DNA of 64,000 nt, taken from sequence record OZ196212.1; one strand, 5' to 3'. Both the position numbers and the translations under genes were made by a program. Numbering within the stretch: the first letter of the stretch is position 1; each line of letters starts with the position of its first letter. Shown here one piece after another: positions 15,296-29,753 of this stretch. Under the pieces are notes generated by a model. The model was given only the letters and a program-made list of their open reading frames with translations, did not search any database and was not told the DNA's origin.

Positions 15296-16729
15296 TTATA
15301 AAGCGTATCGGTCGACACCGACAGTCTTCAGCATGATTTTCACTGGCTCAAGCTCACCACCCAACAGCGACGTTAGAATTGAAGGGCTGCAACCCGACAC
15401 TAACGCTGTGTTCGCTTCACCTGATTTAACAGGCACGTTGTCTAGACGACCACGCAAGTTCCAGAACACTAGTTGCGGCATTTCGTAGCCCGCGTTCGCA
15501 TACATGACTTTGATTGCATCGAAGTTCGTAGTGTTACGAGTATGCCAGCCACCGCCAGTACGAGCTTGATCGAATTCCATATCGCTCATGATAAGCAATT
15601 TGGTTGGCATTTCGTCTTGCGACAAGTTTGCCGTACGAGCGCGTTCAAGAAGAACTTCGAAGCATCGTGTGATGTTCGTGCTCATATCTTCGCCAGATCG
15701 TTGCATGTTGTCAAGACGCGACTTCAAGCTATCACCCGTCAACTTGTGAAAGTGCGGATCACTTGAGAACGAAATGAATTGATCTTTGAAGATACCCTCA
15801 TTACGTTCAGCGACGTAGATGCCAAGAGACATCGCAACTTCTTTACAAGTCACACTACCACCGTGTTCACCGTTGATACCACAGCCCATAGAGCCAGAAA
15901 CATCAACAACTGGAATCACGCGCTCGTCAGAGCCTTCCATGTAGTTCGGTAGAGCTTTCCATTGCTCATTTGCAACACGATGGTCACCCATTTTAACGCT
16001 GCGAACAACATCGTATGGGTAAACAGCACCTGCATTGATCTTCGCTTCACCTTTCACAAGCGATGTGATGTACTCACCGTATGCAGATTCAGCGTTACGA
16101 CCGAATGCTTTCTGATAGCGTGCAGACGCTACAGATGGCAGTTTGCCGAACTCGATCTCGCCCCAATTACGAGCACACATCTTCTGTTCAACAGTGTCAG
16201 ACAAAAGAGAGATCACTTTACGCCACTGCTTCGCGTTTACACCAATCGACTTGATTGTGCGCTTGAACACGACTGCGTTTTTGCTGCGCTCACGAGGAAA
16301 CCACTTAGCAGCAAGCGCGTTTTTGTCATTGACAATCGCGTGTGTCCACAGAGTGATAGCATCAGCTTCAAGAGAAGTACCGAACGCAGATACTAAGTCA
16401 TCGAAACGACCAAGTTCTGGGATCTTGCGCATAACTAGACGCGCTACTTCTGGTTGTTCTTTACACAGACGTGCAAAGATTTTGCGGAAAGTACCGCGCT
16501 CACCTGCACCGCCACGCACGTCGCGAGACCATAGCAAGATGCGAGTTGCAAGCTCAGGGTTTTCACCGAATGCGCGATTAAACGCAGTTAGTGACTGATC
16601 ATTACCGCGCATAGCGCCGATAGTGAAGAACAAGTTTAGACACTCGTTACCCGAAGTGCTGTGTGTTACTGCACCGTTTGCTGTACGTGAATCGTTAGAT
16701 TGCATAGCGTTCATAAATAAACTAGTCAT
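15296..16729 (-). CDS. DUF2828 plus vWA domain protein (TROVE/Ro60-like architecture)
   Basis: TANGAVTHSTSG..LNLFF, RDVRGGAGER, LAAKWFPRE, GAVYPYDVV, MIDAS DVSGSM and SDMEFD; ATG 16729 has a GGAG RBS. Confidence 0.85.
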   Translation of the reverse strand: MTSLFMNAMQSNDSRTANGAVTHSTSGNECLNLFFTIGAMRGNDQSLTAFNRAFGENPELATRILLWSRDVRGGAGERGTFRKIFARLCKEQPEVARLVMRKIPELGRFDDLVSAFGTSLEADAITLWTHAIVNDKNALAAKWFPRERSKNAVVFKRTIKSIGVNAKQWRKVISLLSDTVEQKMCARNWGEIEFGKLPSVASARYQKAFGRNAESAYGEYITSLVKGEAKINAGAVYPYDVVRSVKMGDHRVANEQWKALPNYMEGSDERVIPVVDVSGSMGCGINGEHGGSVTCKEVAMSLGIYVAERNEGIFKDQFISFSSDPHFHKLTGDSLKSRLDNMQRSGEDMSTNITRCFEVLLERARTANLSQDEMPTKLLIMSDMEFDQARTGGGWHTRNTTNFDAIKVMYANAGYEMPQLVFWNLRGRLDNVPVKSGEANTALVSGCSPSILTSLLGGELEPVKIMLKTVGVDRYAL

Positions 16730-16765
16730 TGCTGTAAGCTCCAAATATCAAGGATCAGAAAAATA

Positions 16766-20950: not shown

Positions 20951-20977
20951 AAAAAAACCCGCCTAAAGAGGCGGGTT
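20951..20977 (-). terminator. terminator ending the tRNA/ncRNA island
   Basis: AACCCGCC-TCTTTA-GGCGGGTTTTTTT. Confidence 0.85.
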
Positions 20978-20990
20978 CATCGTGCATAAA

Positions 20991-21182
20991 CAGACATTCG
21001 TGAACAGTTTTAAAGTCTTTCGCATTAATCACATTTGACTTTCATGTTTAACGATACATGAATCCCTACCAACAAGTTGATAGTCGTACCTTCGAGTTTA
21101 TTGCTTTAAGTCACCGAGAATGCGGCTATGCGTTACTCTATCTCTTATTTAAGTTTTGTTAGTTGGTTGCTGTACAATGTCT
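20991..21182 (-). ncRNA. structured RNA closed by a CAGCAA-motif stem (element A)
   Basis: AGACATT-GTACAGCAA...ACG-AATGTCT-G; internal hairpins. Confidence 0.65.
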
Positions 21183-22527: not shown

Positions 22528-22604
22528 TGGTAGTGACTCTGAGGTTCGAACTCAGTACCAGCGGCGTATGAAACCACGACTTTACCATCATAAGCTAAGT
22601 CACC
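22528..22604 (-). tRNA. tRNA-Met(CAT), elongator-like
   Basis: cloverleaf, CCA. Confidence 0.85.
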
Positions 22605-22608
22605 AAAG

Positions 22609-23045
22609 CAGATATTAACGTATTTAATCAGCACACGGGCTTGACACCACATTGTTTGTGGTCTACGTGAAGAACCTCTGCACAACAATCCCGCTCTAAT
22701 TGCGTTATGTGGTGACTGTCACGAGGAATCTAGTCTTCTTTAAGTGCCTTTCGGCTGTAATAAAGTACAGACAATAACGAAGTGTTTTTTCGTCTTTTAC
22801 ATAAATCGCAGTTGACTATCTTGTTACTCTAACAAGCAAGTATCGACTACCTCAGCGTCGCGCCTAGACTGTGTATTTCTACACGCCACATCTTTCGTTA
22901 CAAGTCTCGACCTAGCACGTTGTTGCTGTGCTGAACGTCTCGAACCCACGCTAAGACCTAATCATTGTTTTAGTAGATTAGTAGTTTGGTTGCTGCATAT
23001 TGTCTTACGTGACAGTCAAACACACAATGCCGAAACAATATGCCG
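22609..23045 (-). ncRNA. large nested structured RNA containing a YrlA-like module (element B, 22768-23005)
   Basis: AGACAATA/TATTGTCT stem with GCAGCAA; 10-bp inverted repeat 23008-23017/22714-22723; T-loop GGTTCGAG. Confidence 0.55.
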
Positions 23046-23100
23046 AGACGTTCACGCTCTTATTTTTCAAGTTCACACTATCGTAGTGACTCTCGTGATA

Positions 23101-23176
23101 TGGCATCCCCAGAAAGATTTGAACTTTCAACCCCGAATTTAGAAGATTCGTGCTCTTCCAATTGAGCTATGAGGAC
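23101..23176 (-). tRNA. tRNA-Arg(TCT)
   Basis: cloverleaf, CCA. Confidence 0.9.
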
Positions 23177-23652: not shown

Positions 23653-23764
23653 CTGAGTGTCGTTTATACCGCGTCTCCAAGACCTGAGATACCAACTCAG
23701 CATGGGATTCGAACCCACCGACGTTTCTTGTATCGAAAGAAATTTTAAATTGCTGTAAACACTC
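23653..23764 (-). ncRNA. circularly permuted tRNA mimic (YrlA-like, element D)
   Basis: GAGTGT-TTACAGCAA...T arm GTGGG-TTCGAAT-CCCAT, then CTGAG/CTCAG hairpin...ACG-ACACTC-AG. Confidence 0.7.
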
Positions 23765-24366: not shown

Positions 24367-24439
24367 AAGACACTGTAATCGTTTGGTTTTTTTCTTCAAA
24401 TAAAAAATACTGGTTTGTTTGCAGAATGATTACTATCTT
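24367..24439 (-). ncRNA. minimal motif RNA (element F)
   Basis: AAGATA-GTAATC-ATTCTGCAAAC...ACG-ATTAC-AG-TGTCTT. Confidence 0.55.
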
Positions 24440-27085: not shown

Positions 27086-27200
27086 TGGCTGACCGATGCG
27101 GGACTCGAACCCACGACCACGTGCTTAACAGGCAATTAGAAATGCGGTAGCGATACTTATCAATATCATTTACGTGCTCTACCACTGAGCTAATCGGTCA
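27086..27200 (-). tRNA. tRNA-Asn(GTT)-like RNA with a 38-nt insertion in the anticodon stem
   Basis: D arm, intact CT-GTT-AA loop, T arm, GCCA; insert 27134-27171. Confidence 0.75.
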
Positions 27201-29105: not shown

Positions 29106-29228
29106 TGGTGGAGAGTGCGGGATTCGAACCACGCGGCCAAAAGATTTACTTAGTTAGTGTTTGCAGCATGAATACTTGACAATATTCTGTCAACGTTCTT
29201 TTGCTCTACCAGACTGAGCTAACTCTCC
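29106..29228 (-). ncRNA. CCA-ended tRNA scaffold with motif insert in place of the anticodon loop (T1)
   Basis: GGAGAGT/ACTCTCC-A-CCA, D arm, AAAGA/TCTTT stem enclosing ~52 nt. Confidence 0.7.
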
Positions 29229-29234
29229 ATTTAA

Positions 29235-29374
29235 AACACATTGAGCAGGGTGCAGGATTCGAACCTGCGTCACGATCTTAGAATGATATGCTGTTTGGGT
29301 TGCTGAATACAAGCTATACAACTTGCGTTTATGCTACGTGTGCTAGCCACTACACCAACCCTGCTCAATGTGTT
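29235..29374 (-). ncRNA. tRNA mimic with 17-bp extended acceptor and motif insert (T2)
   Basis: D arm, T arm GCAGG-TTCGAAT-CCTGC, no CCA, ATTCAGCAACC. Confidence 0.75.
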
Positions 29375-29607: not shown

Positions 29608-29753
29608 TAGAGCATATTGGTCGTGCGTACTAGAATCGAACTAGTCCTACGATCTCCTAATGATATGCGTTATTGGTTGCTGAATACTTACTTGTCAGTA
29701 AGCGTTATGCTACGTGTGCTGCCACTACACCAACGCACGACCAATATGCTCTA
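29608..29753 (-). ncRNA. tRNA mimic with 21-bp extended acceptor and motif insert (T3)
   Basis: paralogous to T2; T arm ACTAG-TTCGATT-CTAGT. Confidence 0.75.

What the first reader, a model, noticed from the sequence alone, without database searches (positions are those of the whole stretch)
22609..23045. ~440-nt nested RNA carrying several motif copies
Element B (22768-23005) contains a second YrlA-like module: AGGTCTT/GAGACTT closing a T-loop arm and an AGCAC/GTGCT hairpin that itself holds a motif copy. B is enclosed by a perfect 10-bp helix (23008-23017 with 22714-22723). There may also be an outer motif stem (ATATTG-TTTCGGCAT with ACG-TTAATAT-CTG). It could be a multivalent scaffold for several protein rings (inference; the outer stem is weak).
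Basis: partly seen in the sequence, partly recalled or inferred. Interest (0 to 1): 0.7.

Follow-up and report, generated by a model that had tools for sequence, protein, structure and literature searches.

The report
Conserved structured RNA in phage tRNA operon
Between two tRNA genes of a large marine Vibrio phage lies a conserved, folded ~240-base non-coding RNA that matches no described RNA family; it shares a short sequence motif with odd tRNA-like genes nearby, and the phage also encodes a Ro60-like ring protein that may bind them all.

Summary
The window is a KVP40-like Vibrio phage (6E35.1a type). The finding lies in the 496-nt spacer between tRNA-Arg(UCU) and tRNA-Met in a minus-strand operon of about 27 tRNAs.

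- **Element B (22768-23005, minus) is real.** It is conserved in all KVP40-like vibriophages and closed by a covarying helix. 23 of its 41 pairs show double changes. No conserved ORF and no Rfam match were found.
- **It has a paralogue, C (20991-21182),** just before the operon terminator.
- **The perfect long-range helix exists (11 bp) and exceeds chance here, but does not covary.** The closest variant phage has a different 5' segment, and in KVP40-type phages flank pairing is at chance level. The outer stem is not supported.
- **The "YrlA-like module" fails its defining tests.** There is no T or D arm, no conserved GNCGAA motif and no model hit, and it sits in a lineage-specific insertion.
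A 482-aa protein 6 kb downstream on the same strand folds like Ro60. The motif UNCWGCAAMC occurs 9 times, always on the minus strand, including in B, in C and in three tRNA-like genes with extended anticodon arms.

Best reading: B is a new stable RNA released from the tRNA operon, possibly a partner of the Ro-like protein. Binding is untested.

The parts
22768..23005 (-). Element B: conserved structured non-coding RNA core, 238 nt
   Evidence: 80-86% identity over the core in 50 Vibrio phage records. Covariation shown. Model R1 gives 90 bits.
22998..23005 (-). P1, 5' strand (AGACAAUA)
   Evidence: Pairs with 22769-22776. Compensatory variants are AGGCAAU/AUUGCCU (F86), AGAUAAU/AUUAUCU (1.081.O) and AGACAUU/AAUGUCU (paralogue C).
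22769..22776 (-). P1, 3' strand (UAUUGUCU)
   Evidence: I8
22988..22997 (-). Motif UGCAGCAACC (pattern UNCWGCAAMC), directly 3' of the P1 5' strand
   Evidence: 9 matches in the window, all on the minus strand, against 2.25 expected; 0 of 100 shuffles reach 9. C.GCAA is invariant in 13 family members.
22896..22957 (-). P2/P3 arm with a 6E35-lineage insertion (includes the AGCAC/GTGCT hairpin 22914-22932 and the T-loop-like GGGUUCGAG)
   Evidence: The base of the arm covaries. The distal part is absent from KVP40-type copies.
22871..22884 (-). P4 hairpin capped by a GAAA tetraloop
   Evidence: 6 of 7 pairs show double changes (helix 4).
22844..22860 (-). P5 hairpin (CGAC...GUCG)
   Evidence: KVP40 type has CGUC...GACG, a compensatory swap.
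22820..22836 (-). P-alpha hairpin, just before the invariant AUAGUCAA (22811-22819)
   Evidence: All 5 pairs show double changes across B and C copies (helix 6).
22777..22809 (-). P-beta (4 bp) enclosing a ~25-nt conserved loop (UU.A.G..AAAGACG.AAAACA)
   Evidence: P-beta reads GCGA/UCGU, CCGA/UCGG, GUGA/UCAC and GAGA/UCUC in different copies.
23006..23100 (-). 5' flank, from the tRNA-Arg 3' end to B. Positions 23008-23054 are a 6E35-lineage-specific segment.
   Evidence: The segment is replaced in K566 and D484. It holds antisense patches I1, I2 and I5.
23008..23018 (-). 5' arm of the perfect 11-bp long-range helix
   Evidence: I1; ensemble probability 0.70
22713..22723 (-). 3' arm of the perfect 11-bp long-range helix
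   Evidence: I1. In KVP40-type phages the homologous CGUGAUA pairs locally instead (read by eye).
22605..22767 (-). 3' flank. Holds a GNRA hairpin (22744-22757), a variable middle and a conserved ~70-nt terminal module (22605-22676) with hairpin ACCAC/GUGGU (22646-22662).
   Evidence: Alignment. The hairpin covaries (ACCAU/AUGGU in KVP40). The terminal module is absent in VS1, nt-1 and 1.081.O.
23101..23176 (-). tRNA-Arg (UCU), upstream neighbour
22528..22604 (-). tRNA-Met (CAU), downstream neighbour
20991..21182 (-). Element C: paralogue of B (192 nt), followed by the operon's intrinsic terminator at 20951-20977
   Evidence: Model R1 gives 68 bits. Sequence comparison. Terminator.
15296..16729 (-). 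Ro60-like protein gene (DUF2828 + DUF7788; start codon ATG at 16729)
   Evidence: Pfam and PHROG matches. The top 8 PDB fold matches are all Ro60/TROVE.

Best explanation
**What it is.** The Arg-Met spacer of the phage tRNA operon encodes a stable structured non-coding RNA. Its conserved core is Element B (22768-23005, minus strand). B is one of two paralogues per genome; the other, C, ends the operon.

**How it is probably made.** B is most likely co-transcribed with the tRNAs. The host enzymes that trim the flanking tRNAs (RNase P at tRNA-Met, 3' processing at tRNA-Arg) would then set it free. This is the arrangement of the T4 species 1 and 2 RNAs that follow T4 tRNA-Arg(UCU).

**How it probably works.** At the base of B, a 7-8-bp helix (P1) is followed directly by the single-stranded motif UNCWGCAAMC. 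The same motif sits in the extended anticodon arms of conserved tRNA-like RNAs of the same operon. I propose that P1 plus the motif is the docking site for the phage's Ro60-like ring protein (15296-16729). B, C and the tRNA-like RNAs would then act as Y-RNA-like partners that regulate or tether that protein during infection.

**The 11-bp helix and the other flank pairings** are a recent addition in the 6E35 lineage that encloses B. They are not part of the conserved machine.

**Shown:** structure, conservation, paralogy, synteny, motif enrichment, Ro60-like fold.
**Inferred:** transcription, processing, protein binding, function.
For: **B is a conserved structured RNA.**
- The core is conserved in 50 Vibrio phage records in the same Arg-B-Met synteny.
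- On 13 copies, 86.8% of cells pair, against 34-43% when partners are slid. 23 pairs show double changes and 0 of 500 shuffles reach the observed values.
- RNAalifold independently gives 45 pairs, 20 of them compensatory.
- A covariance model of the 3' domain finds exactly B and C in each genome stretch searched, at 68-98 bits.
- There is no conserved ORF and no Rfam hit.

**Operon context.**
- T4 places rnaD and rnaC right after tRNA-Arg(UCU).
- C is followed by an intrinsic terminator.

**The Ro60 link.**
- The 482-aa protein's AlphaFold model (pLDDT 78.5) matches only Ro60/TROVE structures at the top: E 1e-8 to 4e-6, TM 0.46-0.62 normalised by the model, over the full length. PHROG 850 calls it 'RNA-binding protein'.
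- The motif occurs 9 times, all on the minus strand, against 2.25 expected.
- It is present in tRNA-like genes conserved in KVP40, where they are annotated as tRNA-Pseudo-3/4/5.
- Cronobacter phage S13 has the same kind of long tRNA-like genes, carrying GUAUUCAGCA, about 500 nt downstream of its Ro-like gene.
- In KVP40 and VH7D the 5' UTR of the Ro-like mRNA reads GACAUU-UUACAGCAA-(Shine-Dalgarno)-AAUGUC, with the AUG in the 3' strand. This copies C's P1 plus motif and suggests autoregulation by mimicry.
- A phage Ro60 that binds phage-encoded Y-like RNAs is known (PMC12135203).
Against: - No expression or end-mapping data exist. The only RNA-library contigs come from a ~90% relative, span the spacer plus tRNA-Arg, and could be DNA.
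- No binding data exist.
- B is 6.0 kb from the Ro-like gene, beyond the 4 kb used to define YrlA loci.
- The YrlA motif GNCGAAN0-1G is not conserved in B.
- The UTR mimic helix is weak (-3.5 kcal/mol, no better than shuffles) and is absent in the window itself and in D479.
- The motif also lies in plain 3' trailers of tRNA-Trp and tRNA-Gln. That fits a processing signal equally well.
- The B/C 3' domain is missing from S13, Aeromonas and FelixO1-like phages that have the protein. So the protein does not need B.
Confidence: 0.4

Rival explanations
1. B and C are stable RNAs of the tRNA operon with a function unrelated to the Ro-like protein. They would be the KVP40-group counterpart of T4 species 1 and 2 RNAs. 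The UNCWGCAAMC motif would be a maturation signal, such as an endonuclease recognition or entry site, used throughout the operon.
For: - The motif also occurs in ordinary tRNA 3' trailers (24417-24426 after tRNA-Trp; near 23750 after tRNA-Gln), and in the same places in VH7D, KVP40 and D479.
- The position after tRNA-Arg(UCU) matches T4.
- Phages that have the Ro-like gene can lack the B/C 3' domain.
Against: - A processing signal does not explain why the motif sits inside the anticodon-arm insertions of conserved tRNA-like genes linked to Ro-like genes in distant phages.
- It does not explain the motif in the 5' UTR or at the start codon of the Ro-like mRNA.
- No sequence or model similarity to T4 rnaC or rnaD was found.
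Confidence: 0.3
2. One reading: the whole ~440-nt stretch (22609-23045) is one nested RNA. Several motif copies and YrlA-like modules would hold several Ro-type rings at once.
For: - In this genome the flanks are far more complementary than chance (z = -4.5; the 11-bp perfect helix).
- The minimum-energy fold stacks that helix on P1.
- K566 also shows flank pairing (z = -2.5), though with different partners.
- A Ro60-like gene exists.
- The Thermus phage Ro60 forms higher-order complexes with its Y-like RNAs (PMC12135203).
Against: - The enclosing helix does not covary and is absent in F86 and in KVP40-type phages, where flank pairing is at chance.
- The outer stem is not predicted.
- The proposed YrlA module fails the T-arm, D-arm, GNCGAA and covariance-model tests and is a lineage-specific insertion.
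- Only one full motif copy lies in the region.
- The whole spacer folds no better than shuffles (z = -1.39).
Confidence: 0.1
3. The spacer is a cis-acting switch. In the 6E35 lineage the 5' flank holds antisense patches against the P1 5' strand plus motif (23035-23043 against 22995-23003) and against B's insertion (23044-23054 against 22932-22942). Alternative pairings could then control folding of B, or maturation of the neighbouring tRNAs.
For: Three perfect antisense patches of 9 to 11 nt lie within one 47-nt lineage-specific segment. P1 has only 0.49 probability in the context of the full spacer.
Against: The segment is confined to one lineage and is replaced in K566 and D484. No ligand-binding or terminator element was found. 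The patches could be by-products of local inverted duplication.
Confidence: 0.07

Closest known systems
Bacterial and phage Y RNAs of the YrlA type (Rfam RF02553; Chen et al. 2014, PMC4201824)
   Same: The 5' and 3' ends pair into a basal stem with conserved sequence next to it. The RNA is encoded on the same strand as a Ro60-like gene and embedded among tRNA-related sequences.
   Different: B has no T arm, D arm or acceptor-like stem-loop and no conserved GNCGAAN0-1G. No model hit appears at E<=10. B is twice as long and lies 6 kb from the gene. The protein belongs to the DUF2828 branch, not the Pfam TROVE family.
Yrl1 and Yrl2 of Thermus phage phiLo, bound by phage Ro60 (PMC12135203; PDB 9L5Y, 9KOP)
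   Same: Phage-encoded RNAs with a 5'-3' stem, upstream of a phage Ro60-like gene. The phiLo protein is the best structural match to the window's protein.
   Different: The phiLo RNAs were recognised by a CGAA motif in an internal bulge. B has no conserved CGAA.
T4 species 1 and species 2 stable RNAs (rnaC, rnaD)
   Same: Two small stable RNAs inside or at the end of the phage tRNA operon, directly after tRNA-Arg(UCU). Their function is unknown to my knowledge.
   Different: No sequence similarity and no hit with the B/C model. T4 rnaC ends in a true T arm and B does not. I know of no Ro-like gene in T4; this is from memory and was not tested.
Large ornate phage-associated RNAs found near tRNAs (GOLLD, ROOL)
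   Same: Structured non-coding RNAs of phages that lie next to tRNA genes and carry many GNRA- or UNCG-capped hairpins (a resemblance recalled from memory).
   Different: No Rfam hit to either family. B is much smaller.

Membership tests
YrlA / bacterial Y RNA | GNCGAAN0-1G motif near the 5' end (proposed Ro60 contact) | tested here: not met
   In the window the only match in the spacer is GCCGAAAG, inside a GNRA hairpin of the 3' flank; KVP40 has GCCGCAAG there. The motif is not enriched in the window. KVP40-type 5' flanks do carry G[CGA]CGAAUG in a hairpin loop, but the window does not.
YrlA / bacterial Y RNA | tRNA-like domain: conserved T and D stem-loops with an acceptor-like stem-loop between them | tested here: not met
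   No tRNA or YrlA hit in 22605-23100 at E<=10 and none from ARAGORN. The T-loop-like GGGUUCGAG has only 3 of 5 stem pairs and is absent in KVP40-type copies.
YrlA / bacterial Y RNA | 5' and 3' ends pair into a basal stem | tested here: met
   P1 pairs in 95% of cells, and 3 of its 8 pairs show double changes.
YrlA / bacterial Y RNA | Encoded within 4 kb of the Ro60 orthologue, on the same strand | tested here: inconclusive
   Same strand. B lies 6.0 kb and C 4.2 kb upstream of the gene at 15296-16729.
YrlA / bacterial Y RNA | Bound by the Ro60 orthologue | not testable with these tools
   Needs immunoprecipitation or gel-shift experiments.
Ro60/TROVE protein (for the gene at 15296-16729) | Helical-repeat ring plus C-terminal vWA domain | tested here: met
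   The top 8 Foldseek PDB matches are all Ro60/TROVE over the full length, with E 1e-8 to 4e-6. There is a weak Pfam vWA_Ro60 hit (E 0.11). No Pfam TROVE hit; the Pfam family is DUF2828 + DUF7788.
T4 rnaC / rnaD | Sequence or structural homology to the T4 RNAs | tested here: not met
   The alignment shows no block of similarity. Model R1 finds nothing in the T4 tRNA region.
T4 rnaC / rnaD | Position in the tRNA operon downstream of tRNA-Arg(UCU) | tested here: met
tRNA or tRNA pseudogene | Cloverleaf detectable by a covariance model or by ARAGORN | tested here: not met
Any Rfam 15 family (including group I introns, tmRNA, 6S, GOLLD, ROOL) | Covariance-model hit at the gathering score | tested here: not met
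   on the window; on KVP40, F86, 1.081.O and nt-1.
B/C family (defined here) | P1 + UNCNGCAA + variable centre + P-alpha + AUAGUCAA + P-beta with the AAAGAC...AAAAC loop | tested here: met

The most novel reading that the evidence does not exclude
B and C are a new, non-tRNA-like class of Y-RNA-like partner for the widespread phage DUF2828 Ro60-like proteins. They would be recognised through a helix-plus-UNCWGCAAMC unit shared with tRNA-like RNAs that have extended anticodon arms. The same unit, copied into the protein's own 5' UTR, would give autogenous translational control. If so, the tRNA operons of many large phages carry a built-in Ro-type RNA surveillance or decoy system.
Probability: 0.3. 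Interest if true: 0.78.

Novelty: new variant of a known kind. Interest (0 to 1): 0.6.

Why it matters
- **Unexplained RNAs in phage tRNA operons.** Besides tRNAs, these operons have long been known to hold stable RNAs whose role, to my knowledge, is still unknown (T4 species 1 and 2).
- **What this region adds.** It provides a covariation-supported family of such RNAs with two paralogues per genome. It also provides a concrete, testable link to a Ro60-like protein found in more than 700 sequenced phages.
- **The 'tRNA pseudogenes' need another look.** The long genes annotated this way in KVP40-like and other T4-like phages are conserved, carry the shared motif, and in phage S13 sit next to the Ro-like gene. 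They may be functional Y-RNA analogues.
- **If the link holds,** it would give a tractable phage model for how Ro-type rings choose their RNA partners and what they do during infection.

Tried and rejected
- **Rfam.** Searched at gathering and at permissive thresholds on the window and on four relatives; only tRNAs were found.
- **Weak YrlA hit.** The 28-bit hit at 29170-29296 (gathering score 69) joins the T arm of one tRNA-like gene to the D arm of the next. Chen et al. 2014 warn of exactly this artefact.
- **Group I intron idea.** AAGAUAGUC resembles the P7/S element, but the presumed P7 partner changes without compensation (GAC in KVP40, GUC here) and no model hit appears.
- **T4 rnaC/rnaD homology.** No similarity.
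- **Coding potential.** The longest ORF is 41 aa, and ORF position, frame and strand differ between relatives. The plus-strand CDSs annotated over the spacer in some records are probably spurious.
- **Full-length covariance model of B.** A 79-position model of the 3' domain was used instead.
- **Pattern scans.** The strict pattern found only KVP40 and VH7D in IMG/VR and nothing in JGI metagenomes. The loose pattern gave 5 new viral and 13 genomic loci, all scoring 22.6 bits or less with the model, so they are chance matches.
- **Read evidence.** No RNA run holds the window sequence. Contigs from one seawater RNA library cover a ~90% relative of KVP40 across the spacer and tRNA-Arg, which cannot separate RNA from DNA or show processing.
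- **Pairing of CAGCAA with UUGCU inside B.** Rejected because F86 and 1.081.O show no covariation.

Full report
**Where the finding lies.** The window is a near-identical copy of Vibrio phage 6E35.1a (MW824377.1, Straboviridae, host Vibrio crassostreae) and its sister isolates. The finding (22609-23045) falls in a 496-nt gene-free spacer, 22605-23100. This spacer separates tRNA-Arg(UCU) (23101-23176) from tRNA-Met(CAU) (22528-22604), inside a cluster of 26-27 tRNA genes that are all on the minus strand.

**Checking the observation.**
22768-23005 begins with AGACAAUA and ends with UAUUGUCU-G, which pair.
- The 'perfect 10-bp helix' is in fact 11 bp (22713-22723 with 23008-23018). It starts 2 nt outside that closing helix.
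- The AGCAC/GTGCT hairpin (22914-22932) and the words AGGTCTT and GAGACTT are present.
- The outer stem is only six A-U/G-U pairs. It is not found in the base-pair probability matrix.
- The whole spacer does not fold better than shuffles (z = -1.39). B alone gives z = -1.78. Thermodynamics alone therefore says little, and comparison with relatives decides.

**Element B is a conserved structured RNA.**
- A sensitive BLAST finds the core of B at about 80-86% identity in 50 Vibrio phage records of the KVP40 group, while the flanks are much less conserved.
- In every phage examined the order is tRNA-Arg(UCU), spacer with B, tRNA-Met.
- RNAalifold on nine orthologues gives 45 pairs, 20 of them with compensatory changes.
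- The closing helix P1 covaries: AGGCAAU/AUUGCCU in F86 and AGAUAAU/AUUAUCU in 1.081.O.
- A second copy, which I call C, lies at 20991-21182, directly before the intrinsic terminator that ends the operon. It has orthologues in KVP40 and VH7D.
- B and C share one layout. P1 is followed at once by UNCNGCAA. Then come a variable centre, a hairpin (P-alpha), the invariant AUAGUCAA, and a 4-bp helix (P-beta) around a conserved ~25-nt loop (UU.A.G..AAAGAC...AAAAC). The 3' strand of P1 closes the element.
- P-beta reads GCGA/UCGU, CCGA/UCGG, GUGA/UCAC and GAGA/UCUC in different copies. P-alpha changes completely in 1.081.O and in C yet stays paired.
- On 13 copies, 86.8% of cells pair, against 34-43% when the 3' partners are slid by 1-3 columns. 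23 of 41 pairs show changes on both sides, against 1-12 in the slid controls. No shuffle out of 500 reaches the observed values. The structure was derived partly from these sequences, which favours it, but the margin is large.
- A covariance model of the 3' domain finds exactly B and C in the window, KVP40 and VH7D at 68-98 bits. It finds nothing in T4, D479, a metagenomic T4-like phage, S13, an Aeromonas phage or a FelixO1-like phage.
- Pattern scans of IMG/VR, JGI metagenomes and 185,579 genomes add no further members.
- D479 has a divergent element with the same P1 and motif but a different interior.
- There is no conserved ORF and no Rfam hit in the window or in four relatives.

**The enclosing helix and the 'nested' architecture.**
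- In this genome the two flanks are much more complementary than chance: duplex energy z = -4.5, with 0 of 200 shuffles as good. An 11-nt perfect run is reached in 1 of 200 shuffles.
- The minimum-energy fold stacks that helix on P1.
- The pairing is not conserved. K566 and K567, 93.6% identical over the spacer, carry a different ~50-nt segment in place of 23008-23054. That segment pairs, with several G-U wobbles, with a different part of the 3' flank (z = -2.5).
- F86 keeps the 3' arm CGUGACAGUC but has no 5' partner.
- In KVP40-type phages the homologous CGUGAUA forms a local hairpin that covaries (read from the alignment), and flank-flank pairing is at chance level.
- VS1, nt-1 and 1.081.O lack the 3' terminal module altogether.
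- One curiosity: the 6E35-specific 5' segment is a mosaic of perfect antisense patches. One is against the 3' flank (11 nt), one against B's own insertion (11 nt; 23044-23054 with 22932-22942), and one against the P1 5' strand plus motif (9 nt; 23035-23043 with 22995-23003). This points to recent local inverted duplication, or to alternative folds.

**The proposed YrlA-like module.** Chen et al. 2014 (PMC4201824) define YrlA by four features: a GNCGAAN0-1G motif near the 5' end, nearly invariant T and D stem-loops with an acceptor-like stem-loop between them, a stem formed by the two ends, and a location within 4 kb of the Ro60 gene on the same strand.
- In the finding's region there is no YrlA or tRNA model hit even at E<=10.
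- The T-loop-like GGGUUCGAG shares 12 nt with the T arm of the tRNA-like gene at 27090-27199, but only 3 of 5 stem pairs are possible.
- The only GNCGAANG match is the GAAA-capped hairpin in the 3' flank, which reads GCAA in KVP40.
KVP40-type copies have a short UUCG hairpin there.
- B therefore does not contain a YrlA-like module.

- *A Ro60-like protein.* The ORF at 15296-16744 (annotated start ATG at 16729) lies on the same strand, 6.0 kb downstream of B and 4.2 kb downstream of C. It carries DUF2828 + DUF7788 and matches PHROG 850 'RNA-binding protein'. Its AlphaFold model (pLDDT 78.5) has Ro60/TROVE structures as its eight best PDB matches. These include the Thermus phage phiLo Ro60, Deinococcus Rsr and Xenopus Ro, at E 1e-8 to 4e-6 over the full length.
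- *How widespread it is.* Homologues occur in 710 phage records. In mycobacteriophages they are annotated 'Ro-like RNA binding protein'.
- *An enriched motif.* UNCWGCAAMC occurs nine times in the window, always on the minus strand, against 2.25 expected on both strands. Six copies lie in non-coding parts of the tRNA operon: B, C, the trailer of tRNA-Trp, and three tRNA-like genes.
- *tRNA-like genes with extended anticodon arms.* These are at 27090-27199, 29109-29228, 29242-29366 and about 29609-29752. They have normal acceptor, D and T arms but a 40-60-nt insertion in place of the anticodon loop. The insertion is a 6-bp hairpin with a GAYA-type loop followed, in three of the four (not the one at 27090-27199), by GUAUUCA(U)GC(A/U)GCAA.
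- *Conservation of these genes.* KVP40 has the same genes, annotated as tRNA-Pseudo-3, -4 and -5.
- *Link to the Ro-like gene in a distant phage.* In Cronobacter phage S13 the Ro-like protein is only 48% identical. Two such genes (121 and 113 nt, each with AAACU-GAYA-AGUUU-GUAUUCAGCA) start about 500 nt downstream of that gene on the same strand.
- *FelixO1-like phages.* There the Ro-like gene abuts the tRNA cluster.
- *Which RNAs best resemble YrlA.* The tRNA-like genes are topologically the closest analogues: a tRNA-like body with a protein-binding arm at the anticodon position.
- *What B and C share with them.* Only the motif and the following A-rich AACUAA-type stretch.
- *A possible autoregulatory copy.* In KVP40 and VH7D the Ro-like mRNA is made from a textbook early promoter. 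Its 5' UTR reads GACAUU-UUACAGCAA-(Shine-Dalgarno)-AAUGUC with the AUG inside the 3' strand, which copies C's P1 plus motif. The helix is weak, no better than shuffles. In the window only the motif, overlapping the start codon, is present. This is a lead, not a result.

**Mechanism.** The best-supported account is that B is a stable RNA released from the tRNA precursor by the enzymes that mature its tRNA neighbours. This is the arrangement of T4 rnaD and rnaC, which follow T4 tRNA-Arg(UCU) directly, although no homology to them is detectable. I think it most likely (about 0.4) that P1 plus the motif is recognised by the Ro-like protein. B, C and the tRNA-like RNAs would then be its Y-RNA-like partners. 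The precedent is Thermus phage phiLo, whose Ro60 binds two phage-encoded Y-like RNAs and recruits host PNPase (PMC12135203). The main rival (about 0.3) is that the motif is a processing signal of the operon and B has another, unknown role. The motif's presence in ordinary tRNA trailers fits this rival.

**Expression.** No RNA run holds the window's sequence. Contigs from one seawater RNA library cover a ~90% relative of KVP40 from about 15-34 nt upstream of tRNA-Met, through the spacer, tRNA-Arg and beyond. This could be precursor RNA or contaminating DNA and says nothing about processing.

**Verdict.**
- The solid result is a new, covariation-supported RNA family with two paralogues per genome, confined to KVP40-like vibriophages and matching no Rfam family.
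- The suggestive result is its link, through a shared motif, to conserved tRNA-like RNAs and a Ro60-like protein.

Noticed in passing
window 15296-16729 (-): A 477-482-aa DUF2828 + DUF7788 protein whose predicted structure matches Ro60/TROVE ring proteins (phage phiLo Ro60, Deinococcus Rsr, Xenopus Ro). Homologues occur in 710 phage records.
   Followed up: yes
window 27090-27199, 29109-29228, 29242-29366, about 29609-29752 (all -): Four tRNA-like genes with normal acceptor, D and T arms and a 40-60-nt insertion replacing the anticodon loop. The insertion is a 6-bp hairpin with a GAYA-type loop followed, in three of the four (not 27090-27199), by the GUAUUCAGCAAC-type motif. The last gene has its acceptor stem extended by 10 perfect pairs (AGAGCAUAUU/AAUAUGCUCU). 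KVP40 annotates the homologues as tRNA-Pseudo-3/4/5.
   Followed up: partly
window 20991-21182 (-), terminator 20951-20977 (-): Element C, a 192-nt paralogue of Element B, is the last gene of the tRNA operon. It is followed by a strong intrinsic terminator. Orthologues of 246-248 nt occur in KVP40 and VH7D.
   Followed up: yes
window 29170-29296 (-): A sub-threshold Rfam YrlA hit (28 bits; gathering score 69). It joins the T arm of one tRNA-like gene to the D arm of the next. Chen et al. 2014 describe this tandem-tRNA artefact.
   Followed up: yes
window 24417-24426 (-) and about 23745-23757 (-): Copies of the UNCWGCAA motif lie 10-25 nt downstream of tRNA-Trp and tRNA-Gln. The same placement is seen in KVP40, VH7D and D479.
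   Followed up: partly
L014:2795-2845 (-) (KVP40) and L013:3152-3209 (-) (VH7D): The 5' UTR of the Ro-like mRNA, downstream of a consensus GTTTAC-17-TATAAT promoter in KVP40 (the promoter was not examined in VH7D), copies Element C's closing helix and motif. It encloses the Shine-Dalgarno sequence and start codon, so it may be an autoregulatory operator.
   Followed up: partly
L018:4896-5138 (+) (Cronobacter phage S13); L020:4582 onward (FelixO1-like phage): In distantly related phages the Ro-like gene sits directly beside the tRNA cluster. In S13 it is followed at once by 121-nt and 113-nt tRNA-like genes carrying the same hairpin-plus-GUAUUCAGCA insertion.
   Followed up: partly
window 23008-23054 (-) compared with L003 and L004 (K566, D484): A ~47-nt segment of the 5' flank is specific to the 6E35 lineage. 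It consists of three perfect antisense patches (9-11 nt) against other parts of the spacer. K566 and D484 have an unrelated segment that pairs, with G-U wobbles, to the spacer's last ~27 nt.
   Followed up: partly
L002, L007, L008, L009, L011: positions 19-27 of the spacer: KVP40-type 5' flanks carry G[C/G/A]CGAAUG in the loop of a hairpin (UAUCAU...AUGAUA). This matches the YrlA motif GNCGAAN0-1G and varies only at N. It is absent from the window's lineage.
   Followed up: no
L006:986-1222 (nt-1): Phage nt-1 has a 78-aa ORF inserted between tRNA-Arg and Element B, which lengthens the spacer to 689 nt. An HNH endonuclease gene lies nearby.
   Followed up: no
L015:1233-1544 (+) (Vibrio phage D479): A 312-nt element between tRNA-Asn and tRNA-Leu has the same closing helix (AGACAGU/AUUGUCU) and the CCAGCAAAC motif as B, but a different interior. 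The 3'-domain model does not detect it.
   Followed up: partly
window 22605-23100 (+), as annotated in the OZ19xxxx records: Some database records annotate short plus-strand 'hypothetical protein' CDSs across the spacer, one overlapping tRNA-Arg. None is conserved in position or frame, so they are probably spurious.
   Followed up: partly
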